Assembly: GCA_976226885.1 (NCBI GenBank)
Contig: OZ320315.1
Coordinates: 40,858,001-40,922,000 of the forward strand
DNA from: Iphione sp. A-MEVVRFRX5
Taxonomy: Eukaryota
Reading direction: 5' to 3'
DNA: 64,000 nucleotides
Numbering within the stretch: the first letter of the stretch is position 1; the number at the start of each line of letters is the position of its first letter. The position numbers were made by a program, and so were the translations under genes. Under the pieces are notes generated by a model, which was not told the DNA's origin, ran no database searches, and saw only the letters and a list, made by a program, of their open reading frames with translations. Positions 55,020 through 64,000 of this stretch are shown here, in pieces.

Positions 55020-55260
55020 TGAGAGTGACATACAGTGATATACTGCGGTACTCAGATATAAAGTAACGTATAGTGACACTGTAACAAACTATGACATACT
55101 ATGACACACAGTGACATACAGTAATATACAGTGACACACTGACACAGTAATACAGAGTGATACACAGTGACACACAGTAACATACTATAACACACTATGA
55201 CACTGAAACACTGTGCCATACTGTGTCACACTGATACCATGGCATAGAGTAACACTTATC
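55020..55260. repeat. Degenerate minisatellite of about 10 bp (acagtgacac/acagtgacat)
   Basis: Repeated gtgacatacag/gtgacacacag units ending about 120 bp before the Gypsy insertion. Confidence 0.7.
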
Positions 55261-55379
55261 ACTTCACCAGTCAGATAACTTACAAGAACAAAGAGCTTCT
55301 AGCCAGTCCCTTTTTAAGGAAAACTCTTGTTAGGACAGTGGTTATTTTTCTGTCTTACAGATATTAAGTCAAAACATAC

Positions 55380-55592
55380 TGTTGGCCTCCACCATAATGA
55401 AGACGACATAAGTTGAGGAGAATGATGTTTATTGCTGAAGAGCTTCGACACAACTGACAGCGAATCCAAAATACAACGCATTTATATAGCAAATTGAAAC
55501 CCTCCGCAGTATAAATAATTCCCTCCACGGTGTACCCTCCGCACCCTCCGCACCCTCCGCTAAATGGTCCTCCGCTCCCCCCCGTCGCTACA
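55380..55592 (-). repeat. 3' LTR, 213 bp, TG...CA
   Basis: Minus strand begins TGTAGCGAC and ends GGCCAACA; first 125 bp on the plus strand match 63876-64000; TATATAAA at 55488-55481; AATAAA at 55433-55428. Confidence 0.93.
55501..55575 (-). promoter_or_regulatory. U3 cluster of five GCGGAGG motifs upstream of the LTR TATA box
   Basis: CCTCCGC at 55501, 55536, 55545, 55554 and 55569; the middle three have a 9-bp period. Confidence 0.75.
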
Positions 55593-55605
55593 CTATCCCC
55601 TCCTT
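55593..55605 (-). other. Polypurine tract
   Basis: AAGGAGGGGATAG directly abuts the TG of the 3' LTR. Confidence 0.9.
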
Positions 55606-55608
55606 AAT

Positions 55609-55920
55609 TTAATCCTGACCCAGGATACTATAACATTCATGAACCTCAAATTCAACATCAGCGGCGGTAAGAAACTGTAAACGAATATCAAATTCATCAA
55701 TCTGGAGGCCTAGGGGCACTGGCCGCACCCCTTTATACCAGTCCGAGAAGAGAAACTCGGTCTCTCCCTCCGGGAAGCCGTCCTCTTCCGTTCTTTGTAA
55801 GCAAACACGACTTTCAATTACTACGCACATTCTACCTCGCCTCCGCGCTACTCGGCTTTTACCCACCGATATTAGAATTGTCCACCCCCGGGGGGGCTGA
55901 GTTAATGAATTTACCGGCCT
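55609..55920 (-). CDS. 103-codon open frame, in frame with the zinc-finger ORF after one TGA; acidic/aromatic tail (or separate 73-aa ORF from ATG 55830)
   Basis: Frame is open from 55920 to TAA at 55611-55609, 3 nt before the PPT; ...EEDGFPEGETEFLFSDWYKGVRPVPLGLQIDEFDIRLQFLTAADVEFEVHECYSILGQD. Confidence 0.5.
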   Translation of the reverse strand, partial: RPVNSLTQPPRGWTILISVGKSRVARRRGRMCVVIESRVCLQRTEEDGFPEGETEFLFSDWYKGVRPVPLGLQIDEFDIRLQFLTAADVEFEVHECYSILGQD

Positions 55921-58780
55921 TCAGGAGGCCCAACGCAACCAGTCCGAGAGGGTAAGTGTCCGTGAGTGACTGCCGTGGTGGCCCCCGTCCGGGGCTGGCA
56001 ACCGCGGGAGCCCGGTCTCCCCAGCGGCGGAGCTGGAATCTTCCTCTGAGCCTGTCGACAAGGGTTGGCCCGTTCGGGGGAGAGCTGTACCGCCCCCCGC
56101 CCGATTGCTGGGGCCCGGTTCGGCGTGGGAGGAGGTCCCGTTACCACCCTTCCCGTGTTCGTCACCCTCCGCCGACTGGAGGGGCACCTTCCTTCTACCA
56201 TGGCTAGGGCCCTGTTCGATGTGGGAGGCGGGCCCGTCACCGACCCTCCCGTTTTCATCACCCTCCGCCGATTGGAGGGGCACCTTCCTTCTAGGCTGGT
56301 CAGGACCTGGCATGGCAGGAGGGGAGGTTTCAATCCCCCCCCCCCCTTGTTCGTCACCCTCCGCCGATTGGAGGGGCACCTTCCTTCCGTCGTGGGAGGT
56401 GGGCCCGTCACCAACCCTCCCATGTTCGTCACCCTCCCCCGATTGGAGGGGCACCTTCCTTCTAGGCTGGTCAGGATCTGGCATGGCGGGGGGGGGAAGC
56501 TTCAGTTCCTCCCCCCCCTTGTTCGTCACCCTCTGCCGATTGGAGGGGCACCTTCCTTCCGTCGTGGGAGGTGGGCCCGTCACCGACCCTCCCGTTTTCA
56601 TCACCCTCCGCCGATTGGAGGGGCACCTTCCTTCTAGGCTGGTCAGGATCTGGCATGGCGGGGGGGGAAGCTTCGGTTCCTCCCCCCCCTTGTTCGTCAC
56701 CCTCCGCCGATTGGAGGGGCACCTTCCTTCCGTCGTGGGAGGTGGGCCCGTCACTGACCCTCCCGTTTTCATCACCCTCCGCCGATTGGAGGGACACCTT
56801 CCGTTCCGTTGGGCTGGGGGCTGAGGTGGTTTGCCCCCCGGCCTTGCGGGGGGAGGGCTCGGCCTTCCCGCTTCTGGACCCGTCACCTCCTTCCGACGAC
56901 AGAGGCGCGCCAGGCTTACTCATGGGGTGTTGACGCCTCGCTTCCCAATCCAAGACCTGGCGCGCGATGCGCCTCGACTTCTCCGCCTCCTCATGACCAA
57001 CGGGAAGGAGGGGTTCGTCCACAGGGTCGGCCTCCGCTTTTGCGCCTTCAGTGTAGCACAGTTCTTGGGACGGTTTCTCCGGGGTGGGCCCGTCCTCGCT
57101 GGACGGAATGGGGTGGCCAACGAGGGAGCCAAAGGAAGACTCGCCCCCCTCCGCAGCCCCCATCGGTTCAGCGCCCTCGGTGTTTCCTCCCGGCTTCTCT
57201 GGAATCGTGGCGGGTGGGGCCACCGATGGAGGGTTCGCTGCGGCCAAGAGGGTGTCCATGTCTACTGCCCCGAATAAGTCCTCCAGAACTTGGGCGGCTT
57301 GGTCGACCTCAGCCTGTGGCGCCTTCGGCGCCTCGCGTGCGGAGGAGACCAGGGTCTGAATCGCAATGCTCAGTTCATCTGGGGTCGGAGGCATCGTAGG
57401 AGTGTGGAGTAGGGGTGACGGTACCGACCTCGAATGAGTGGGAGTCTTGAGGAGCGGGGACATGGCCTTATCCGGGAGACCCCCACTCTTGTCTGCGACG
57501 AGCCCGGCTCGGGCAACCATCGGCCGACCAGAGGGGGCTTCTGCTCGCTGCCCCCCCTTCAGTAACTCCGGCGTGCGGAGGGCTGGCTTGGCGGGGGTCA
57601 GCCCCAGGCCCTTCCCCGGGGTGACTGGGCTGGACTCCGACCGACTGGGCCGGAGATCTGCAGTTCGTATGGCGGCCTCTAGGTCTCCCGCGGCGGACAG
57701 CAGCTTCTCCAGGGCGGTAGGCGTCACAGGAGGGTCAGCGGTTTCGGCGGCATCGAGGCGGTTGATGGCCTCTTGGAGTCTGGCCTTCATCCCCTGGGGC
57801 GAGGTGGGGGGGGCGGATGGCTCACCCTCCCCCTCCTCGTGGACGAGCTGGCGGACGCGAGGGTGCGTGGGGGGGTCGACTGCTGCCTCCGCCTCCCCAA
57901 GCTTCCTCTTCTTTGTTGAGGAGCTAGTCGCCGATGCCTTGGTGGTAGCGCCCCCCTCCGCGCTTACCCCCTCCGTCTTCTTGGTGGGTGTCAAGCTTTT
58001 AATCGTCACCTCCCCCGCTGGAGCGGCCTTGACGGGGGTAGACCTTGTCACCCTCTTCTCAGGTTCGTCCCCCTTTTCCCGTCGGGTGGTCTTCTTGTGC
58101 ACCCGGACCCAAGCTGCCGAGGGAGACCGGGAAGCGGGAGCACTCTCCTCCGACGAAGTCAGGATCGCCGGTCTCCGCCTCGGGCTCTCTCGTCGCCCTG
58201 TCGAAGTGGACGCCTGCGGTGAAGTCGGTGGCCGGCATGGAGGTCCCAGTGACGGGGTGGGCAGCGGTGGTGCGGAGGGCTCACTGTCCGACGAGGAGGG
58301 AAGTCTGGCTTTCTTCCTCTTGGGTGGAGTGGGGGTACTGTCCCGGCGGCGTGACTTCCGTTGCTCGTGTGACCCCTCACCCCGCTCTCGGCTTCTCTTC
58401 TTGTCCTTGTGTCGGCCACCACAATGAGATCTGGCTGAATCGGAGGTCCCACTCCCCGCTTCCCCCTCGGCCTCCTCAGGGCGGCGGAGCCGCCCCCGCA
58501 AGGTGGTGGACCCCGGCTTCTTGTAAAACTCGTAATATTCTTCCTTCATTTTTGGCAGCAGTTTCTGTGCCCCTCCCTCAGCCAGGTGGGTCTTCGAGTC
58601 CAGGTGCCGCCTCAGATCGTCCTTGCGCATAAAGATCTTCCCATCGCACTTCTCCCCTCCGCATCCCCACGCGAAGCCCTCAGAGCTGTGGGTCTGTACA
58701 TGCCGCTTAAGGTTGTCCTTGCGGTCGCAGACCTTCTTGCAGAGTGGGCAGGGATACTCGTCTTTCTGGCTCTTCGTCAT
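55921..58780 (-). CDS. Putative separately expressed two-finger C2H2 protein (769 aa as assembled to 56471; about 952 aa if the G9 tract at 56488-56496 is G8)
   Basis: gacaccATG at 58780; finger 1 CPLC-x12-HVQTH; finger 2 CGGEKC-x13-HLDSKTH (58756-58586); NLS-like KKRSRER, PKRKKAR and KKRK; long S/P/T/E-rich region; repeats. Confidence 0.65.
56155..56805. repeat. Tandem array of 8 units (75/96-bp spacing) encoding RKVPLQSAEGD repeats
   Basis: Core tcaccctccgccgattggaggggcaccttcc; motif positions 56166, 56262, 56358, 56433, 56530, 56605, 56701, 56776. Spacings are multiples of 3 except one of 97. Confidence 0.95.
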
Positions 58781-61700
58781 GGTGTCGAATGATGAGCATC
58801 CCCTGGGGCGAGCGTCACTTATATTCGAATCTGGCGCCGCAGCTTCCTCCGCTCGATTTTCATTGGCTAGTAGCTTCCCTCCGCATCGCGGCCCCCTCCG
58901 CATTCGTCTTCCGCCCTTCTGATTGGCCCCTTCATTTTGAACTCCAACGGCCCTAGGTTCGCGGAGGTCCTCCGCCCTTTCCTCAGTCCTCCCTCCGCTT
59001 TTTTCGATGCGGAGGGTGGCCACGACCGCGCTATCTTCCCTCGGGGCCCCTGGCTTCAGGAGGTCGGCGTGTACTACTCTTTCTCGCCGCCCCTTCTTGA
59101 TGCGATAGACGGCGGCCGAGAGCTGCTTGCTGATCCGCCATTTGCCTTGCCAGTATCGCTGTAACTTAGGAGATAGCCCTGGCTTTTTCAACGGCAGGAA
59201 CAGGTACACCTCCTCCCCTACCTCGAAGTTCCGGGGCCGCACTCGGTGGTTGTACCAGTCGGTCTGGCGCTGGATTCCCTCCCCTAACCGCTGGTTGGCC
59301 AGCTGATGGGCTTGTTTCATCCGTTCCATCTGCTCCTGGACGAACGGTCCAACCTCCGCTCCTCCCTCCTGTGGGGGGCCTCCGTAAGCTGCCTCAACGG
59401 GGAGTGTAGTCTCCCGATTCAGGATGAGGAAATTTGGGGAGAAGCGAGTGGTGCGGTGGGGGGTCACCCGGTACGCAGCCGTTACAAACGGTAGCCGAAG
59501 GTCCCAATCGCGTTGGTCTTCCTGGACCGTCGTTGCGAGCATATGCTCTAGCGTTCGGTGGAACCTCTCCACCACTCCATCGGCTTGGGGATGGTAGGGG
59601 GTGGTCCTGGTGTTCTGAATTCCGCAGCCCTTGAGCAGTTGGGCCACTAGTTCTGCCTCGAAGTTCCGGCCTTGATCGCTGTGGATTACTCGGGGGGGCC
59701 CGAACCGACAGATCACCTCCCTCATCATCACCTCCGCAGTAGCTTCCGCGGTTTGTTCCTTGAGTGGGAAGGCTTCTGCCCATTTGCTAAAATGATCCCC
59801 TACCACCAGGATGTACTTGTTGCCCCGGGGCGTCCTCGGAAATGGCCCGGCGATGTCCACGGCTACCAACTCCCAAGGTCCCGGACTCTGGCGGTGCTGC
59901 AGTAGAGTTCGTTTCCTCCGACTGGGCCTCTTCGCCTCCAGACAACGCGGGCAGGCCGATCCCCATACAATCAAATCCCGAGTCATTCCCGGCCAGAAAT
60001 ACCTCCCCCGGAGGAGGCCAGCCATTTTCTGAGGGCCGAGATGGCCGCCCATGACTCCCTGGTGAATCATCGTCCAACACTCTTTTTGTAGGGGAGGGGG
60101 GACCCAGGCTTGCCACCAGGCCCTTCCGTCTTCATGTTCCCACCTCCGCACGATCAGCCCTCCGCGGGCCTGTAGTCGTTTCCACTCCCCTACCAGCCGC
60201 CGCTCTTCCCAGCTGGTCTCTGTCTTAACCTCGGGGGGGCCTTCCCCCCGCTCCAGCCGTCCTAGCAACTCGCCCCCAATCGGGTCCGCTAAGGTGTCTC
60301 TAGCCATGGTGGAAGATGAAGGAGCCTCCGCCCTCACTTCCGTAGTCAGAATAGCGGTCGTCTCCTCGGGCTCTCGTCGGCCGCACTGTTTACATGGCCG
60401 TCTGGACAACCCGTCGGCGTTGTTGTGTACCCTCCCCGGCCGATGTATGACTTCCACCTCTCGACAGGCCAGTTCTTCTAGCCAGCGTGCCATTTGGCCC
60501 TCCGGCTCTTTGAAGTTCATGAGCCACCGGAGGCTCCCATGGTCGGTACGCACCACTACCTTCCTTCCGCTAACGTAGGTCTTGAATTTCCGGAGGGCGA
60601 AGATTACAGCTAGCAGCTCCTTCCGAGTTACGCAATAGCGTTGCTCGGGCTTAGTGAGGGCCCGACTAGCGTACATCAGCACTCTCTCCCGGCCGTCCTG
60701 CTCCTGGGAGAGGACTGCACCTACTCCCTCGCCGGAAGCGTCAGTGTCTACAATTAGGCGCCCCTCCGGTTGGGGGTATCCCAGGATAGGTGCGGAAGTT
60801 AGGCAGGGCTTGAGATCTTCAAAGGCGGCTTCCTCTTCACTTCCCCACCGGAACTCTGCTTCTTTGTCCAACAGTCGATGGAGGGGGGCGGCTCGCCGCG
60901 CAAAGTCTCGGATAAACGAGCGGAAATAAGAGGCTAAACCCAGGAAGGCACGGAGACCGGCCAAGGTCCCCGGCACTGGCCACTCTGCTACGGCTTGAAC
61001 CTTCTCCGGGTCTGGGCGGACCCCCCCCGCACTAACGATATGGCCGAGGTACTGTACCTGTTCTCGGAGGAGCTGGCATTTGCTAGGTTTCACCTTGAGA
61101 CCGGCGGCCTCCAGCCGTTGGAGCACCTCCGCCAAGCGGTCGCACATCTCCCCCACCGTCTTGGCCATGATGATGACATTGTCCAAGTACACAAGGCAGG
61201 AGTCCCCGATCAGACCGCGGAGGACGACATCCATCAATCGTTCAAAGGTGGAGGGGGCGTTGCAGAGACCGAAGGGCATGACCCGGAACTGGTAGAGTCC
61301 GGACGGGGTGCAGACGGCTGTCTTCGGGCGGTCCTCTGGCCGGACCGCTACTTGCCAATACCCAGACGCCAGGTCAATCACCGTGAAGTACTTGGCTCCG
61401 GCCAGCGCATCCAGGGTGTCATCCACGCGTGGTAGGGGGTAAGCATCCTTGCGCGTTCGCTCATTGAGCTGTCGGAAGTCTATACAAAACCGCCATTCCC
61501 CACTCCGCTTCTTGACCAGTACCACCGGTGAGGCCCACGGGCTGCTGGAGGGTTCCAACACCCCTTGTCGTACCATTTTTTGGATCTCCGCCTCCCCGAT
61601 GCGCATTTTATGGGGTGGAAGACGTCGGAATCTCTGTCGCACTGGGGCTGCCTCTCCTATATGAATCTCGTGTTCCACGAGAGTGGTGCGCCCTAGATCA

Positions 61701-62740
61701 GTACCCTCCCTCTGGAAGGCGCGGCGGTGAGTCCAAAGCACCTGCCTCAGCTGCTCCCGCTCTTCCACCGTGCTTCCCGAGGGCAGCTCGGACATCAGCT
61801 CCTCGATTAGCCGTGCGTAGAGGGGCTCCTCTGCCTCACCCTCCTCCTTAGCTGGTACCTCTTCCACCGCCTTAAGTTCGCCTGGATCGTCTTGCCTCCG
61901 CAGTTCCTCCTCGACCTCCTCCGCCTCCGCCACCTGCGTCCCCCTCCGCAGCCAGACCTCCCCCTCCGCCACATTCAGACAGAGGAGTTGGGCCCGTCCA
62001 TTGTCCACGTTAGCCACTGCATGTGGCACTCGCACCCCTGCCCGCTGTTCCAGCGCGGGAACCGGTCCTACGACCCATTCGCCCCCTTGGGCCTGACCGA
62101 TGGTCACCGAGATAAGGGTCTCGGCCCGGGCTTTCAGGCAGGTGTCCTGGGCTAGCTGTACTCGTTCCGGTCGCGCTCTGTTCTTCCGGATGGTGATTGT
62201 CCCGGCGGCTGTGTCCACTACAGCCCTCCTCCGGCGGAGGGCGTCCATCCCCAGGATGGCAGCTTGCTCCACCTCTGCAACCAGGGCCTCCATCGTCCAG
62301 GGTGTCTCCCCGAAGACCACCGTCACTTCGGTCCTCCCCACACAGGGGAAGGGCGCCCCGTTGGCGGCAATGATGCGTCGCCCTGGTAGGACCGTGACAG
62401 GCAGCCGGAGGGCCTCCGCCGTTCGCACCGCGATGATGGTGGTTGAGGCTCCTGTGTCCACCAGCCACGTCATTTCTTGGCCTCCGTCTTTTCCTCGTAG
62501 CCCTAGCGCCCCGGTAAAGGGGTCCGCACGCCCCTTCAGGACGGTGAGGGCTTCGTCTTCCTCCTTCGGCGGCATGGCCGCCCTCTTCTGGAGCCAGTCA
62601 TTGAGCTGCTCCTTGGGGATGGACTCCTCCGCCGCCTCTGCCTGTCCCCTTACAGGGAGGGCGGCACGTCGTTTTCCGCCAGCTTCGGCCGTGAAGGGCA
62701 ATCCCGCTTGAAATGCCCCTCCTTCCCACAGCGGAAGCAC
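56471..62740 (-). CDS. pol: Pol polyprotein (PR, RT, RNase H, integrase) fused in frame to a C2H2 zinc-finger/disordered extension
   Basis: LVDTGAS (PR); VIDLASGYWQV, MPFGLCNAP, YLDN (RT); TDAS...ELLA...TDH (RH); H-x6-H...C-x2-C, VDIAGP, SDQG-x35-E (IN). No stop after IN. Probably expressed by -1 frameshift from gag. Confidence 0.95.
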   Translation of the reverse strand: MLPLWEGGAFQAGLPFTAEAGGKRRAALPVRGQAEAAEESIPKEQLNDWLQKRAAMPPKEEDEALTVLKGRADPFTGALGLRGKDGGQEMTWLVDTGASTTIIAVRTAEALRLPVTVLPGRRIIAANGAPFPCVGRTEVTVVFGETPWTMEALVAEVEQAAILGMDALRRRRAVVDTAAGTITIRKNRARPERVQLAQDTCLKARAETLISVTIGQAQGGEWVVGPVPALEQRAGVRVPHAVANVDNGRAQLLCLNVAEGEVWLRRGTQVAEAEEVEEELRRQDDPGELKAVEEVPAKEEGEAEEPLYARLIEELMSELPSGSTVEEREQLRQVLWTHRRAFQREGTDLGRTTLVEHEIHIGEAAPVRQRFRRLPPHKMRIGEAEIQKMVRQGVLEPSSSPWASPVVLVKKRSGEWRFCIDFRQLNERTRKDAYPLPRVDDTLDALAGAKYFTVIDLASGYWQVAVRPEDRPKTAVCTPSGLYQFRVMPFGLCNAPSTFERLMDVVLRGLIGDSCLVYLDNVIIMAKTVGEMCDRLAEVLQRLEAAGLKVKPSKCQLLREQVQYLGHIVSAGGVRPDPEKVQAVAEWPVPGTLAGLRAFLGLASYFRSFIRDFARRAAPLHRLLDKEAEFRWGSEEEAAFEDLKPCLTSAPILGYPQPEGRLIVDTDASGEGVGAVLSQEQDGRERVLMYASRALTKPEQRYCVTRKELLAVIFALRKFKTYVSGRKVVVRTDHGSLRWLMNFKEPEGQMARWLEELACREVEVIHRPGRVHNNADGLSRRPCKQCGRREPEETTAILTTEVRAEAPSSSTMARDTLADPIGGELLGRLERGEGPPEVKTETSWEERRLVGEWKRLQARGGLIVRRWEHEDGRAWWQAWVPPPLQKECWTMIHQGVMGGHLGPQKMAGLLRGRYFWPGMTRDLIVWGSACPRCLEAKRPSRRKRTLLQHRQSPGPWELVAVDIAGPFPRTPRGNKYILVVGDHFSKWAEAFPLKEQTAEATAEVMMREVICRFGPPRVIHSDQGRNFEAELVAQLLKGCGIQNTRTTPYHPQADGVVERFHRTLEHMLATTVQEDQRDWDLRLPFVTAAYRVTPHRTTRFSPNFLILNRETTLPVEAAYGGPPQEGGAEVGPFVQEQMERMKQAHQLANQRLGEGIQRQTDWYNHRVRPRNFEVGEEVYLFLPLKKPGLSPKLQRYWQGKWRISKQLSAAVYRIKKGRRERVVHADLLKPGAPREDSAVVATLRIEKSGGRTEERAEDLREPRAVGVQNEGANQKGGRRMRRGPRCGGKLLANENRAEEAAAPDSNISDARPRGCSSFDTMTKSQKDEYPCPLCKKVCDRKDNLKRHVQTHSSEGFAWGCGGEKCDGKIFMRKDDLRRHLDSKTHLAEGGAQKLLPKMKEEYYEFYKKPGSTTLRGRLRRPEEAEGEAGSGTSDSARSHCGGRHKDKKRSRERGEGSHEQRKSRRRDSTPTPPKRKKARLPSSSDSEPSAPPLPTPSLGPPCRPPTSPQASTSTGRRESPRRRPAILTSSEESAPASRSPSAAWVRVHKKTTRREKGDEPEKRVTRSTPVKAAPAGEVTIKSLTPTKKTEGVSAEGGATTKASATSSSTKKRKLGEAEAAVDPPTHPRVRQLVHEEGEGEPSAPPTSPQGMKARLQEAINRLDAAETADPPVTPTALEKLLSAAGDLEAAIRTADLRPSRSESSPVTPGKGLGLTPAKPALRTPELLKGGQRAEAPSGRPMVARAGLVADKSGGLPDKAMSPLLKTPTHSRSVPSPLLHTPTMPPTPDELSIAIQTLVSSAREAPKAPQAEVDQAAQVLEDLFGAVDMDTLLAAANPPSVAPPATIPEKPGGNTEGAEPMGAAEGGESSFGSLVGHPIPSSEDGPTPEKPSQELCYTEGAKAEADPVDEPLLPVGHEEAEKSRRIARQVLDWEARRQHPMSKPGAPLSSEGGDGSRSGKAEPSPRKAGGQTTSAPSPTERKVSLQSAEGDENGRVSDGPTSHDGRKVPLQSAEGDEQGGGGTEASPPAMPDPDQPRRKVPLQSAEGDENGRVGDGPTSHDGRKVPLQSAEGDEQGGGGTEASPPRHARS
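58785..59015 (-). promoter_or_regulatory. Internal Pol II promoter embedded in the integrase/zinc-finger linker
   Basis: GGGCGG (58977-58972, 58916-58911), GGCCAATCA (CCAAT at 58926-58922), AGCCAATGA (58866-58862), TATAAG (from 58823), Inr TCATTC (A at 58790), ATG at 58780; seven GCGGAGG motifs. Confidence 0.65.
62631..62677 (-). other. Putative -1 programmed ribosomal frameshift signal
   Basis: G GAA AAC (62677-62671), 5-nt spacer, then hairpin GCCGCC-C-UC-CCUGU/AAGGGG/ACAGG-CA-GA-GGCGGC (62665-62631); pol is in the -1 frame relative to gag. Confidence 0.7.
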
Positions 62741-63891
62741 CCGGTTCGACTGCCCGTTGCTGGACCTTGTTCCAACTGCCTCTCCAGCTGGTCTAGCTTC
62801 TTAGCGAGCCGGTCCAAAAAGTCATCTTCTCGTTTGGCCCGGGCGTCTCCCTCCACCGTCGACAGCGAGTGGCAGCCAGCCCTTCCGCCATAGGCCTTCC
62901 CGGTTGGTTCCCTTTCCCTCCGGCCCTGGAAATAGGCCTCCCCGAAGAGGGCCTCTGATACTGCCGCGCGGAAGTTGGCCACCCTCCGCTGCACCACCCA
63001 CTTCCTCACCTTCTCATCCGCAATTGCCTGGATGAAGCTATCCTGGCAGAGCTCATCTGCCCATTGTCCTCGAACCCCCGGGTACGCCCGTTTCACCAGG
63101 TTCTCCACTTCATCGGCCAGTTGGGATAAGTCGGCCTCGCCTTGCTTGTGGGTCTTTAACTGCTGTTTAAATAGGTCCACCTGATCTGGCGACCGGAAGC
63201 GACTGCGGAGGGCCTCCACCAACTTCTGGTAGGCCCGTGGATCATGGACCCGCACGCCGGAGTTCCGCATGGTGGTCTGTGCCGGACCACGGAGACTGAT
63301 TCCGAGATGAATGGCCTTCTCCTTGGCGGACCATCGATTAGCGGCGGCGGCGAGGCCGAAGTGGTGAAGGTAATCGTCAAGGTCCGTCGAGCCATCGTTT
63401 GGCTTGGGCTTAGCTCTACCCTTCCGGGGCCGCTCATCTGAGTCTTCTCCTGTTTCCTCTTCCTCCTCCTCCTCCTCCTCTTCTGACTCCTGGTGGGGGT
63501 CTTCCCCTTCGGGGAGTTCCTCTTCTCTTCCGGCTGGCTGTCCCTCCCCCGTGCCGGGGGCCCCCGCCACCCCGGGGTCCTCCGCAGGGTGGGCCCCTGC
63601 CGAGCCGTCTTCACCGCTCCTTGGGGGGGAAGCCGATTCCCCCTCGGTACCTTCGCCCCCTCCCCATAGCCTCGAAGGGGTGCGTACGGGGCGCGGCCTC
63701 CCAGTGGGCAGTTGCGCCTCCTCTCCCCCGTCGGCGTCCTCCGCAGTTGCCCTGCGGGTAACCCTCCGCGTCCCGGCTGCCGTGGCTGCTTTCTGCGGAG
63801 GGGGTGTTTGCTCCCTTTCGGGGCCTCGATTCGTCGGCCCCGAGGTTCCCCTCCGCATCCCACTTCTGACACCAATGTTGGCCTCCGCCAT
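62650..63891 (-). CDS. gag: Gag protein, 413 aa
   Basis: Acidic/low-complexity N-terminus; capsid-like DLDDYLHHFGLAAAANRWSAKEK...LRGPA; nucleocapsid CFRCGKEGHFKRDC (CCHC). Confidence 0.93.
   Translation of the reverse strand: MAEANIGVRSGMRRGTSGPTNRGPEREQTPPPQKAATAAGTRRVTRRATAEDADGGEEAQLPTGRPRPVRTPSRLWGGGEGTEGESASPPRSGEDGSAGAHPAEDPGVAGAPGTGEGQPAGREEELPEGEDPHQESEEEEEEEEEETGEDSDERPRKGRAKPKPNDGSTDLDDYLHHFGLAAAANRWSAKEKAIHLGISLRGPAQTTMRNSGVRVHDPRAYQKLVEALRSRFRSPDQVDLFKQQLKTHKQGEADLSQLADEVENLVKRAYPGVRGQWADELCQDSFIQAIADEKVRKWVVQRRVANFRAAVSEALFGEAYFQGRREREPTGKAYGGRAGCHSLSTVEGDARAKREDDFLDRLAKKLDQLERQLEQGPATGSRTGCFRCGKEGHFKRDCPSRPKLAENDVPPSL
63857..63874 (-). other. Primer binding site, tRNA-Leu
   Basis: TGGTGTCAGAAGTGGGAT, 1 nt from the LTR end, is complementary to the metazoan tRNA-Leu(CAA) 3' end ATCCCACTTCTGACACCA (recalled, not searched). 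Confidence 0.88.
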
Positions 63892-64000
63892 AATGAAGAC
63901 GACATAAGTTGAGGAGAATGATGTTTATTGCTGAAGAGCTCCGACACAACTGACAGCGAATCCAAAATACAACGCATTTATATAGCAAATTGAAACCCTC
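63876..64000 (-). repeat. 5' LTR (R/U5 part and TATA; rest outside window)
   Basis: 123/125 identical to 55380-55504; the full LTR is expected to end near 64088. Confidence 0.95.

What the first reader, a model, noticed from the sequence alone, without database searches (positions are those of the whole stretch)
58586..58780. Gypsy-encoded C2H2 zinc-finger protein predicted to bind its own element: candidate self-targeting transactivator or anti-silencing system
Seen: two C2H2 fingers with helix residues (-1 to +6) RKDNLKR and RKDDLRR, plus NLS-like motifs. Established: in the C2H2 code the modules RSDNLVR and RSDDLVR specify GAG and GCG, fingers read DNA antiparallel, and Asp+2 favours a 3' G/T. 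This predicts 5'-GCGGAG(G/T)-3'. Seen: exactly GCGGAGG is clustered in the LTR U3, in the promoter upstream of this ORF and in the 3' array. Inference: a positive-feedback circuit like foamy-virus Tas (internal promoter plus LTR) or VANDAL VANC (motif-directed anti-silencing), but built from a C2H2 module in a metazoan LTR retrotransposon. I know of no description of this arrangement but could not search the literature.
Basis: partly seen in the sequence, partly recalled or inferred. Interest (0 to 1): 0.95.

Follow-up and report, generated by a model that had tools for sequence, protein, structure and literature searches.

The report
Retrotransposon zinc fingers matched to own motif
A clade of Gypsy retrotransposons carries, in frame after integrase, a two-finger C2H2 domain, and its DNA-reading residues change from family to family in step with the short motif packed into that family's own promoter regions; this is strong sequence evidence for a self-recognising regulator not found described for this kind of element.

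Summary

**What is in the window.** Window 55380-64088 (minus strand; 5' LTR partly outside) holds a Ty3/Gypsy element.
- At 58586-58780 it encodes two C2H2 fingers with helices RKDNLKR and RKDDLRR.
- GCGGAGG is the commonest 7-mer: 50 of the window's 56 copies lie in the element (4.25 expected window-wide).
- Density peaks in LTR U3 just upstream of the TATA box and in the 270 nt before the finger Met.

**The decisive test: co-variation.**
- Six helix sets were compared, from five families in this genome and three metagenome relatives.
- The site predicted by one fixed look-up table is over-represented only in the element carrying those fingers, for five of six sets (1 of 720 permutations reaches the score).
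- The seventh base follows helix position +2.
- One family misses by one base, and one distant relative with odd fingers is unreadable.

- The fingers are not a free-standing ORF. They sit in the pol frame, which stays open through the linker in five lineages.
- A Met just upstream is also conserved.
- Integration is not aimed at the motif (ATAT duplication in 11 of 11 copies).

**Limits.** No RNA data could be obtained, and first readers noted the system elsewhere in this genome. I rate it a new variant of a known kind, of high interest.

The parts
55380..55592 (-). 3' LTR (213 bp, TG...CA). U3 is an array of five exact GCGGAGG plus one decayed copy (55501-55575). TATATAAA lies at 55481-55488 and AATAAA at 55428-55433. 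The target duplication GTAT lies at 55376-55379.
   Evidence: Self-BLAST LTR pair at 97.7% identity; sequence read; motif positions.
55593..55605 (-). Polypurine tract (AAGGAGGGGATAG) directly upstream of the 3' LTR.
   Evidence: Sequence.
55641..56080 (-). Coding stretch for the conserved C-terminal domain of the tail (about 110 aa, alpha+beta). In this copy it is out of frame with pol and interrupted by a stop.
   Evidence: Three-frame translation; conservation across fam1-3, F12, L041, L042; AlphaFold2 pLDDT 85-92; no informative fold match.
56107..56802 (-). Coding tandem array (96- and 171-bp periods). Each unit carries CCAAT-N3-GCGGAGG. The pol-finger frame of this copy ends inside it, at 56471.
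   Evidence: Tandem Repeats Finder; motif positions; translation.
56471..62740 (-). Single open frame: protease, reverse transcriptase, RNase H, integrase, linker, two C2H2 fingers, disordered P/G/S/A-rich tail. It is 2089 aa here and 2395 aa in intact copies.
   Evidence: ORF list and translation; Pfam RVT_1, RT_RNaseH, rve, Integrase_H2C2, gag-asp_proteas, Integrase_p58_C, zf-C2H2; copies with a 2395-aa frame.
58490..58582 (-). Conserved stretch after the fingers (AEGG...YYEFYK..GS..LRGR), kept in fam1-3.
   Evidence: Alignments A2 and A3; coordinates.
58586..58780 (-). Two-finger C2H2 module from the conserved Met to the last His of finger 2. Finger 1 is at 58688-58750 (RKDNLKR) and finger 2 at 58586-58663 (RKDDLRR).
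58781..59053 (-). Integrase-to-finger linker that doubles as a promoter-like region. It holds 7 GCGGAGG on both strands (58846-59015), two CCAAT boxes and AATATAAG about 40 nt before the ATG. It is open only in the pol frame.
   Evidence: Sequence; density 25.9 per kb; stops by frame 0, 5, 5 measured on the intact family-1 copy C.
59054..59077 (-). End of the conserved integrase (VVHADLLK).
62650..63891 (-). gag (Retrotrans_gag, CCHC knuckle). The ATG lies inside U5 of the 5' LTR and the frame runs through the primer-binding site.
63858..63875 (-). Primer-binding site TGGTGTCAGAAGTGGGAT. Its complementarity to a tRNA-Leu 3' end rests on my own knowledge.
   Evidence: Sequence.
63876..64000 (-). 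5' LTR, the part inside the window. It continues to about window coordinate 64088 outside it.

Best explanation
The element belongs to a clade of Ty3/Gypsy retrotransposons that carry their own sequence-specific DNA-binding module.

**What the protein is.** It has two C2H2 fingers, a long disordered tail with nuclear-localisation-like basic clusters, and a conserved C-terminal domain of about 110 aa.

**What it reads (strongly supported by sequence).** The fingers read a 6-7 bp site, here 5'-GCGGAG(G)-3': finger 2 reads GCG, finger 1 reads GAG, and Asp+2 sets the next base. The element has packed that site into three places:
- its LTR U3, directly upstream of the TATA box;
- the stretch just upstream of the finger domain;
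- in some families, the whole body.

**What the binding does (inferred).** It most likely promotes the element's own transcription, as a family-private positive loop and/or protection from host silencing.

**How the protein is made (partly inferred).** It is made as the C-terminal part of Pol, since the frame is maintained. It is probably also made separately, from the conserved Met downstream of an internal CCAAT/TATA module that carries the same sites.

The activating or anti-silencing effect and the internal transcription start are inferred, not shown.
For: 1. **The motif is real and positioned like promoter elements.**
   - GCGGAGG is the commonest 7-mer in fam1 and fam2: 46-56 sense copies per about 9 kb, against 2.5-5.8 expected by low-order Markov models.
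   - Density is 30-36 per kb in LTRs, 13-23 per kb in the linker and 4-9 per kb in the body.
   - U3 is essentially a motif array followed by TATA in fam1, fam2, fam3, F11, F12, L041 and L043.
2. **Co-variation.** One fixed table (position -1, +3, +6 to base) was used for all predictions.
   - The predicted sites are GCGGAG (fam1-3), GCGGTA (L041), GCGGGG (L042), NCGGTG (L043) and GCGGGN (F12).
   - Ranks in their own elements: GCGGAG is first of 2080 hexamers by z-score in fam1 and fam2, and is the top-z hexamer in fam3. GCGGTA is first in L041. CGGTG is first of 512 pentamers in L043. GCGGGG is first by count and seventh by z in L042.
   - These sites are unremarkable in the other elements, apart from GCGGGG in F12, whose own predicted site (GCGGGN) overlaps it. 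The element-by-site matrix is diagonal, and 1 of 720 permutations reaches its score.
   - Finger 2 positions -1 (Arg) and +3 (Asp) and finger 1 position +6 (Arg) are invariant. So is the CGG core of every motif.
   - The seventh base follows position +2. Asp gives G in 63 of 71, 69 of 82 and 60 of 81 instances. Ser gives C in 23 of 35, 17 of 20 and 21 of 32.
3. **Helices are conserved where the rest is not.** Fam1 and fam2 are 50% identical over the 120-aa finger region, yet both helices are identical while other finger residues differ.
4. **Closest Pol relatives with other fingers lack the motif.** L045 has 3 GCGGAG against 3.5 expected, and L044 has 4 against 5.8. L045's LTR is packed with a different motif.
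5. **Codon choice in pol.** It creates motif copies beyond what the protein sequence needs in fam1-3 and L043: 23 against 6.5 +/- 2.2, 32 against 8.4, 30 against 8.0 and 47 against 18.5, with 0 of 400 shuffles reaching the observed count.
6. **Recognition acts on DNA, not RNA.** Motif orientation differs between lineages: fam1 has 59 sense and 12 antisense copies, L042 has 7 and 25.
7. **Internal module.** CCAAT, GCGGAGG, CCTCCGC and TATAAA lie about 55 nt before the ATG and are kept in fam2 and fam3. Fam1 has the same parts with AATATAAG. The linker peptides are unrelated.
8. **Conserved Met.** A Met lies 7-12 aa before the first Cys in six of eight lineages.
9. **The module resembles DNA-binding fingers.** The nearest solved sequences are DNA-binding fingers: Aart, a consensus finger protein, ZBTB7A, Zif268 and WT1.
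10. **Module-to-triplet assignments from the literature.** RSDNLVR = GAG, RSDDLVR = GCG, QSSNLVR = GAA and QSGDLRR = GCA are tabulated in PMC5260015.
Against: - No binding, expression or methylation data exist. No RNA run was listed, so the transcription start, the separate protein and any activation are untested.
- Family F11/F16 (QPSNLRR + RRTDWKR) should read GCGGAA by the table. Its enriched site is TGCGGCAC, a one-base miss at the Asn+3 position.
- L045's fingers, with non-canonical spacing, give no usable prediction (3 of 6 bases).
- I derived the predictions for the three metagenome relatives with the k-mer lists already in view.
- The inter-finger linker is 8 residues and is not TGEKP-like.
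- The pol-through-linker frame is kept open in all five lineages tested. This would not be needed if the protein came only from an internal promoter.
- TATA and CCAAT boxes are absent from the linkers of F12, L041, L042 and L043 (F11 has a CCAAT but no TATA).
- Body-wide enrichment is not universal.
- No activation domain could be identified.
Confidence: 0.6

Rival explanations
1. The fingers act only as a C-terminal part of integrase. Within the particle or pre-integration complex they bind the motif arrays next to both ends of the reverse-transcribed DNA. This would help integrase find or hold the LTR ends, or help nuclear import or retention, much as DNA transposases bind subterminal repeats. 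Any effect on transcription would be secondary.
For: - The linker between integrase and the fingers has no stop in the pol frame but 3-13 stops in each other frame, in all five lineages tested. The chance values from shuffles are 0.023, 0.10, 0.001, 0.0005 and 0 of 2000.
- Motif copies lie 8-24 nt from the U3 terminus (fam2 position 8, L043 position 12, fam1 position 24) and 13 nt from the U5 terminus in fam1.
Against: - In L045 and L044 the finger gene is a separate ORF 1.3 kb or more downstream of pol, so fusion is not essential to the clade.
- A Met just before finger 1 is conserved.
- The arrays sit in promoter-typical position before the TATA box and before the finger Met, not only at the termini.
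- An open frame could also be kept to avoid a long untranslated 3' region on the genomic RNA (inference).
Confidence: 0.2
2. The finger protein is a self-limiting repressor or boundary factor. It would bind the arrays to damp transcription (copy-number control, like the P-element KP repressor or Ty1 p22) or to insulate the element (like the Su(Hw) site array of Drosophila gypsy, but with the factor supplied by the element).
For: - Arrays of a single site, spread over the LTR, an internal region and a 3' array, resemble an insulator layout.
- No activation domain was recognised in the tail.
- A conserved C-terminal domain could mediate self-association. This is inference only.
Against: - Families with these arrays are highly successful and recent. 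At least 150 copies were scored out of 2998 candidates, many with identical 2395-aa frames, and LTRs are 99.5-100% identical.
- U3 holds little besides the arrays and a TATA box, so a pure repressor would leave the promoter without obvious activator sites.
Confidence: 0.12
3. Integrase-fused fingers steer integration to DNA carrying the motif, that is, into or next to other copies, as chromodomains or the Ty5 targeting domain steer integration.
For: The domain is fused C-terminal to integrase, the place where known targeting domains sit.
Against: - All 11 full copies examined have an ATAT-type 4-bp duplication (ATAT in most; GTAT, ATAC or ATAG variants).
- They lie in DNA of 37-46% G+C.
- There are 0-3 GCGGAG in 4 kb of flanks in ten of the eleven, and 8 in one.
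- The window copy's 55 kb of host DNA has 6 motif copies, about the chance level.
Confidence: 0.03
4. The motif arrays are sites for a host factor, or a by-product of G+A-rich composition and tandem duplication, and the match to the fingers is coincidence.
For: - The sense strand is G/A-rich, and higher-order Markov models explain part of the count (25.8 of 46 at order 4, though that model is fitted on the motif itself).
- Some copies lie in tandem repeats.
Against: - Different families in the same genome carry different motifs that track their own helices.
- Spacing inside the arrays is irregular: 9-21 nt in fam1 U3 and 12-21 nt in the L042 linker.
- Synonymous-codon shuffles do not reproduce the counts.
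- The permutation test gives 1 of 720.
Confidence: 0.03

Closest known systems
Foamy-virus Tas (Bel1) with LTR plus internal promoter (own knowledge)
   Same: - A retroelement encodes a DNA-binding regulator.
- Its sites lie both in LTR U3 and in an internal promoter upstream of its own gene.
- The loop can start from the internal promoter.
   Different: - There is no sequence relation, and Tas is not a zinc-finger protein.
- Here the gene is fused in frame to integrase and lies in a Ty3/Gypsy element without env.
- Activation and the internal transcription start are not shown.
VANC anti-silencing proteins of Arabidopsis VANDAL transposons (PMC5735166)
   Same: - A transposon-encoded, sequence-specific DNA-binding protein.
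- Short target motifs accumulate in the element, often as tandem repeats.
- Related families have diverged in both protein and motif, so each system is private to its family.
   Different: - VANDALs are plant Mutator-type DNA transposons, and VANC is not a C2H2 protein.
- Here the element is an LTR retrotransposon, and the specificity change can be read directly from three helix positions.
- Loss of methylation is not tested.
En/Spm TnpA and Mu transposase as self-directed regulators (bioRxiv 10.64898/2026.08.24.746577)
   Same: An element-encoded protein binds repeated motifs in the element's own promoter or ends and regulates cognate copies.
   Different: - Those proteins derive from transposases of DNA transposons.
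- Here a cellular-type C2H2 module is appended to a retroviral-type integrase.
Su(Hw) binding-site array of Drosophila gypsy (own knowledge)
   Same: A Gypsy-group element carries an array of sites for a C2H2 zinc-finger protein.
   Different: - Su(Hw) is a 12-finger host protein, and the array is an insulator in the 5' untranslated region.
- Here the element encodes the fingers itself, and the arrays sit in U3, the linker and the 3' region.
Integrase C-terminal targeting modules (chromoviral chromodomain, Ty5 targeting domain) and engineered integrase-zinc-finger fusions (own knowledge)
   Same: An extra nucleic-acid- or chromatin-reading module is fused to the C-terminus of a retroelement integrase.
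   Different: Integration sites do not follow the fingers' motif here: the duplication is ATAT and the flanks are AT-rich and motif-free.
Two-finger fungal regulators Mig1/CreA (site SYGGRG) and designed GNN modules RSDNLVR=GAG, RSDDLVR=GCG (PMC5260015 for the modules; Mig1/CreA from own knowledge)
   Same: Two tandem fingers with Arg -1, Asp or His or Asn +3 and Arg +6 read GCG-GNG-type hexamers. The same contacts are inferred here.
   Different: - There is only generic C2H2 similarity.
- The inter-finger linker is 8 residues, finger 2 has an extra hairpin residue, and the context is a retrotransposon polyprotein.

Membership tests
Ty3/Gypsy LTR retrotransposon | Direct LTRs ending TG...CA, flanked by a short target duplication | tested here: met
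   213-bp LTRs at 97.7% identity; TG...CA ends; GTAT duplication here and ATAT-type duplications in all 11 copies.
Ty3/Gypsy LTR retrotransposon | Domain order gag(CCHC)-PR-RT-RNaseH-IN, with integrase after reverse transcriptase | tested here: met
   Pfam hits in that order along the frame: gag-asp_proteas 87-170, RVT_1 409-569, RT_RNaseH 658-758, Integrase_H2C2 880-938, rve 956-1051. gag carries zf-CCHC.
Ty3/Gypsy LTR retrotransposon | Primer-binding site after the 5' LTR and polypurine tract before the 3' LTR | tested here: met
   TGGTGTCAGAAGTGGGAT follows the 5' LTR, and AAGGAGGGGATAG precedes the 3' LTR.
Classical DNA-binding C2H2 zinc finger (tandem) | C-X2-4-C-X12-H-X3-5-H spacing with conserved hydrophobic residues | tested here: met
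   Finger 1 fits exactly and passes Pfam zf-C2H2 (28.7 bits against 25.2). Finger 2 has X13 and X5, so it fits only loosely and gets no Pfam hit of its own.
Classical DNA-binding C2H2 zinc finger (tandem) | Beta-beta-alpha fold for each finger | tested here: met
   AlphaFold2 model: strands 9-10 and 17-18 with helix 21-29; strands 34-39 and 49-50 with helix 53-60; pLDDT 70-86.
Classical DNA-binding C2H2 zinc finger (tandem) | Canonical TGEKP-type 5-residue inter-finger linker (7 residues between His and Cys) | tested here: not met
   The linker is SSEGFAWG, 8 residues between the last His and the next Cys. Tandem reading of adjacent triplets is therefore inferred from the co-variation, not from the linker.
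Classical DNA-binding C2H2 zinc finger (tandem) | Sequence-specific DNA binding set by helix positions -1, +2, +3 and +6 | tested here: inconclusive
   There is no binding assay. Indirect support comes from co-variation of these positions with the enriched motif in five of six helix sets.
Foamy-virus Tas-type circuit | Regulator sites in LTR U3 | tested here: met
   Five to ten predicted sites lie in the 100-170 nt before the TATA box in fam1-3. Analogous arrays occur in F11, F12, L041 and L043.
Foamy-virus Tas-type circuit | Active internal promoter upstream of the regulator gene, carrying its sites | tested here: inconclusive
   A CCAAT / motif pair / TATAAA module about 55 nt before the ATG is kept in fam1-3, and motif clusters lie before the Met in all lineages. 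No transcript data are available.
Foamy-virus Tas-type circuit | Homology to Tas/Bel1, and a spumavirus genome with env | tested here: not met
   The protein is a C2H2 module with no other Pfam family. The element has no env and is Ty3/Gypsy. It may work like Tas but is not a member.
VANC-type anti-silencing system | Element-encoded DNA-binding protein whose motif accumulates in the element and diverges together with the protein between related families | tested here: met
   on the sequence side only.
VANC-type anti-silencing system | Causes loss of DNA methylation or silencing at the bound elements | not testable with these tools
   No methylome or ChIP data. The only hints are that all motifs contain CpG and that within-copy LTR changes are mostly CpG transitions.
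Integrase-fused targeting domain | Insertion sites correlate with the ligand of the fused domain | tested here: not met
   In all 11 copies the target is ATAT-type in AT-rich DNA without motif enrichment.

The most novel reading that the evidence does not exclude
Animal-type Ty3/Gypsy retrotransposons have evolved private, orthogonal transcription-factor and binding-site pairs. Each family encodes a two-finger protein, made both as the end of Pol and from an autoregulated internal promoter, that switches on or shields only copies carrying its own 6-7 bp site. Several families (GCGGAGG, TGCGGCAC, GTGCGGG) then coexist in one genome without cross-talk, and respecification happens by one or two helix substitutions with matching turnover of the arrays. 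This would be an LTR-retrotransposon counterpart of VANC and Tas, and a natural test set for the zinc-finger recognition code.
Probability: 0.45. Interest if true: 0.9.

Novelty: new variant of a known kind. Interest (0 to 1): 0.85.

Why it matters
**Precedents.** Element-encoded regulators that recognise their own element are known for complex retroviruses (Tas, Tax) and for plant DNA transposons (VANC, TnpA, Mu transposase). Four full-text searches found no description of one in an LTR retrotransposon, or of one built from C2H2 fingers.

**If the binding is confirmed, the clade offers:**
- a new way for retrotransposons to control or protect their own transcription, independent of host factors;
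- a natural series of finger-and-site pairs in which one or two helix changes go with one-base changes in hundreds of genomic sites, giving a ready-made test of the recognition code, including the +2 cross-strand contact;
- a mirror image of the host KRAB-zinc-finger arms race, with the fingers on the transposon's side;
- compact orthogonal two-finger and 7-bp modules for synthetic biology.

**Annotation.** The 700-1150-aa "extension" of Pol in such elements is a functional module, not read-through noise.

Tried and rejected
**Searches that came back blank or generic**
- Sequence searches for the finger module gave nothing specific. The search for homologous proteins was blank for the 160-aa piece and for residues 1300-1480 of the full frame. 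The exhaustive HMMER search gave only generic multi-finger proteins, none below 1e-30. The ESM Atlas feature search gave small fungal-type C2H2 clusters at 0.93, a lead only.
- The metagenome-contig scan with the fam1-3 finger alignment found no relative. The eight-sequence alignment was too diverse to search with.
- No RNA run was listed, so read laying was not used and no transcript evidence exists.
- Rfam found nothing in the window. Pfam on host-side ORFs gave nothing usable for naming the organism.

**The C-terminal domain**
- It has no Pfam family.
- Foldseek against PDB gave a best TM-score of 0.37.
- VIA-align gave a best Z of 7.3, within the range the tool calls common.
- The Atlas gave TM-scores of 0.51 or less, with phage tail-terminator and PilO-like rows.
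- No function can be drawn from any of these.

**Other negative results**
- A simple screen of the tail for acidic/hydrophobic activation patches found nothing convincing.
- The code prediction for L045 (GCGGCT) failed, with 0 copies. Its LTR motif is TCACGC/GCGTGA and its second finger has non-canonical spacing.
- The prediction for F11/F16 (GCGGAA) failed by one base.

**Readings rejected**
- Integration targeting to the motif.
- Recognition of RNA, because motif orientation differs between lineages.
- Pure composition or codon usage.

**Limits of the work**
- Sixteen further full-length family representatives were planned.
The majority lines that align_proteins prints by itself were not used.


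Full report
**1. What is at the coordinates.**

The window's last 8.6 kb is far richer in G+C than the host DNA before it (61-66% against 33-60%, mostly about 40%). It is a Ty3/Gypsy LTR retrotransposon on the minus strand.
- Fetching the neighbouring DNA showed two LTRs at 97.7% identity. They lie at window 55380-55592 and 63876 to about 64088, so the 5' LTR runs out of the window.
- The LTRs end TG...CA. There is a GTAT target duplication, a primer-binding site TGGTGTCAGAAGTGGGAT and a polypurine tract.
- gag (62650-63891) has a CCHC knuckle.
- One open frame (56471-62740, 2089 aa) carries protease, reverse transcriptase, RNase H and integrase.
- That frame does not stop after integrase.
- Finger 1 passes Pfam's zf-C2H2 threshold. 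Finger 2 is looser: C-X4-C-X13-H-X5-H.
- The helices are RKDNLKR and RKDDLRR. Both NLS-like clusters are there.
- An AlphaFold2 model built from eight homologues gives two beta-beta-alpha units.
- The nearest solved sequences are DNA-binding fingers such as Aart, Zif268, WT1 and ZBTB7A.

**2. The motif.**

- GCGGAGG occurs 56 times in the window against 4.25 expected. 50 copies lie in the element and 6 in 55 kb of host DNA.
- Density peaks in LTR U3 and in the linker. U3 has five exact copies plus one decayed copy in the 90 nt before TATATAAA (23.5 per kb). The 270 nt between the end of integrase and the finger Met has 7 copies on both strands, with two CCAAT boxes and AATATAAG (25.9 per kb).
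- The rest of the element has 4-6 per kb.
- It is the commonest 7-mer of the element.
- Shuffling synonymous codons while keeping the protein and codon usage gives 6.5 +/- 2.2 GCGGAG in PR-IN where 23 are seen, with 0 of 400 shuffles reaching that. The excess in coding sequence is therefore not a by-product of an Ala/Glu/Gly-rich protein.

**3. Copies and families in the same genome.**

The genome (1.18 Gb, 89 contigs) holds at least 150 scored copies out of 2998 candidates. Many have an identical 2395-aa frame.

The window copy is a decayed member:
- its frame ends inside the 171-bp coding array;
- the rest of the tail continues in another frame;
- the C-terminal domain carries a stop.

*Other families with the same predicted site.*
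- A second family is 50% identical over the 120-aa finger region and has a 290-bp LTR of unrelated sequence. It keeps both recognition helices letter for letter while other finger residues differ. Its U3 is again an array of GCGGAGG(G) before a TATA box.
- A third family has RKDNLRR and RWEDLKR, the same predicted site, and again GCGGAG as its top hexamer.

*Families with other helices.*
- F12 (IQYRLER / RRSDFVR) has an LTR full of GTGCGGG.
- F11/F16 (QPSNLRR / RRTDWKR) has an LTR full of TGCGGCAC.

**4. Relatives elsewhere.**

A Pol search found three metagenome-assembled pol-tail fusions, 47-49% identical in Pol. Each carries a homologous two-finger module with different helices.
- L041: QKSSRTR / RPSDMRR.
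- L042: RPSHRNR / RKGDIVR.
- L043: RRSSRDR / RLADLRA.

Their most over-represented k-mers are GCGGTAC, TTGCGGGGC and (C/T)CGGTG. These are arrayed before the LTR TATA box where the LTR is in the contig (L041, L043) and in the integrase-finger linker in L041 and L042; L043's linker is no denser than the rest of its element.

The two closest Pol relatives (55% identical, L044 and L045) carry the finger gene as a separate ORF 1.3 kb or more after pol.
- They have no GCGGAG excess (3 against 3.5 expected, 4 against 5.8).
- L045's 969-bp LTR is packed with another motif, TCACGC.

**5. The co-variation test.**

I used one fixed table:
- position -1: R gives G, Q gives A;
- position +3: N gives A, H or R gives G, D gives C, S gives T;
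- position +6: R gives G.

These are the contacts behind the modules RSDNLVR = GAG, RSDDLVR = GCG and QSSNLVR = GAA tabulated in PMC5260015. QSSSLVR = GTA is from my own memory.

| Lineage | Finger 1 / finger 2 helices | Predicted site | Observed motif | Result |
|---|---|---|---|---|
| fam1, fam2 | RKDNLKR / RKDDLRR | GCGGAG | GCGGAG(G) | rank 1 of 2080 hexamers by z (15.6-15.8) |
| fam3 | RKDNLRR / RWEDLKR | GCGGAG | GCGGAG(G) | top-z hexamer (z 17.3) |
| L041 | QKSSRTR / RPSDMRR | GCGGTA | GCGGTAC | rank 1 of 2080 (20 against 4.7) |
| L042 | RPSHRNR / RKGDIVR | GCGGGG | TTGCGGGGC | first by count, seventh by z; the top-z words are overlapping pieces of the same motif |
| L043 | RRSSRDR / RLADLRA | NCGGTG | (C/T)CGGTG | CGGTG rank 1 of 512 pentamers (116 against 46.8) |
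| F12 | IQYRLER / RRSDFVR | GCGGGN | GTGCGGG | z 4.3 |
| F11/F16 | QPSNLRR / RRTDWKR | GCGGAA | TGCGGCAC | z 1.0 for the prediction; GCGGCA has z 5-7, so a one-base miss |

- None of the hits is enriched in the other elements, except where specificities overlap (F12 and L042).
- The site-by-element matrix is diagonal. Only the true assignment, 1 of 720 permutations of the six distinct specificities, reaches the observed score.
- In the alignment of all modules the invariant residues include finger 2 Arg-1 and Asp+3 and finger 1 Arg+6. These match the invariant CGG core.
- The base after the hexamer follows position +2. The Ser families F11, L041 and L042 have C in 66-85%.

Caveat: I wrote down the predictions for the three metagenome relatives with their k-mer lists already in view, so this is not a blind test.

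**6. How the protein is made.**

- In fam1, fam2, L041, L042 and L043 the integrase-finger linker (79-418 codons, not conserved as peptide) has no stop in the pol frame and 3-13 stops in each other frame. Shuffled linkers stay open with probability 0.10 down to below 0.0005. The read-through frame is therefore maintained, and the fingers are at least a C-terminal part of Pol.
- A Met lies 7-12 aa before the first Cys in six of eight lineages.
- In fam2 and fam3 the sequence just upstream reads CCAAT, GCGGAGG, CCTCCGC, TATAAA, about 55 nt, then ATG. Fam1 has the same parts with AATATAAG. The encoded peptides are unrelated.
- In all lineages a cluster of the family's own motif lies within 250 nt before that Met.
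- In L044 and L045 the gene is separate.
- The simplest reading is dual expression, as the end of Pol and from an autoregulated internal start. The second route is inferred, because no RNA run could be listed.

**7. What the binding is for.**

*Integration targeting is disfavoured.*
- All 11 full copies have an ATAT-type duplication in AT-rich DNA without motif excess.

*RNA recognition is disfavoured.*
- The motif is mainly sense in fam1 (59 to 12) but mainly antisense in L042 (7 to 25).

*Transcriptional control fits best.*
- The arrays fill U3 up to the TATA box and precede the regulator's own start.
- Given very recent, abundant amplification (LTR pairs 99.5-100% identical in most copies), positive control is more likely than repression.

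*An anti-silencing component is possible.*
- Every motif contains CpG.
- In fam1-3 and L043 the sites are spread through the body beyond codon expectation, though not in F11, F12, L041 or L042.
- Within-copy LTR differences are mostly CpG transitions that destroy motif copies.

*The integrase-tethered rival remains open.*
- Here the fingers would bind the subterminal arrays of the cDNA. The maintained fusion frame, and sites 8-24 nt from the U3 end, keep it alive.

*The tail gives no further clue.*
- It is disordered, with basic clusters, and ends in a conserved alpha+beta domain of about 110 aa. That domain models well (pLDDT 85-92) but has no informative structural neighbour.

**8. Comparison with what is known.**

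- It works most like foamy-virus Tas (LTR plus internal promoter) and like VANC of Arabidopsis VANDAL transposons (PMC5735166). It also resembles TnpA and Mu transposase as self-directed regulators (bioRxiv 10.64898/2026.08.24.746577).
- With VANC the shared features are a private motif, tandem arrays and co-divergence of protein and target.
- It is a member of none of these. The protein is a C2H2 module, the carrier is a Ty3/Gypsy element, and the module is fused to integrase.
- Four literature searches found no description of an LTR retrotransposon with such a module.
- First readers of this scan noted the same system on other pieces of this genome. No follow-up was shown.

**9. Verdict.**

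- Self-recognition is strongly supported by sequence evidence.
- The activating or anti-silencing effect and the internal promoter are plausible but untested.
- The organism was not identified. The nearest named Pol relatives are in arachnid, fish, frog, nematode and sponge proteomes. Host-flank CpG observed/expected is 0.73.

Noticed in passing
window 63858-63891 (minus strand): The gag frame starts at an ATG inside U5 of the 5' LTR and is translated through the primer-binding site. The N-terminus MAEANIG is kept in fam1, fam2 and fam3.
   Followed up: partly
window 55380-55592 versus 63876-64088; other copies in G000: Differences between the two LTRs of a copy are mostly CpG transitions: 3 of 4 in the window copy, and the single difference in two other copies. 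Several destroy GCGGAGG copies. Host-flank CpG observed/expected is 0.73. This hints that the host methylates these elements.
   Followed up: partly
window 55641-56500 (minus strand): The window copy is defective in its tail. The pol-finger frame ends at 56471 inside the tandem array, the tail continues in another frame, and the conserved C-terminal domain has a stop near 55,95x. Intact copies have a 2395-aa frame.
   Followed up: yes
window 56155-56805 (minus strand): Every unit of the coding tandem array carries CCAAT three nucleotides before GCGGAGG. The same pairing of a CCAAT box with the motif recurs in the internal promoter-like module of fam1-3.
   Followed up: partly
window 61895-61969 (minus strand): A tight cluster of five GCGGAGG copies (19-bp period) lies inside pol, between protease and reverse transcriptase.
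   Followed up: no
L045:4374-16978 and L044:4666-17696: The closest Pol relatives (55%) are 12.6-13 kb elements. They have a separate ORF3 with two odd fingers and long GSGHVS or PAAEPA repeats. L045 has a 969-bp LTR built of 65-bp repeats full of TCACGC.
   Followed up: partly
proteins P0232 (aa 1660-1710) and P0218 (aa 928-985): Another Gypsy group from metagenome assemblies has a C2HC plus C2H2 finger pair after integrase. Zinc-finger tails on integrase may be more widespread than this clade.
   Followed up: no
G000, many loci listed: The genome holds further families with open frames of 2340-2742 aa and the same module layout.
   Followed up: partly
window 55040-55260: A GTGTCAC/TGTATGTCAC-type low-complexity repeat lies in host DNA about 120 nt beyond the element's 3' end.
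   Followed up: no
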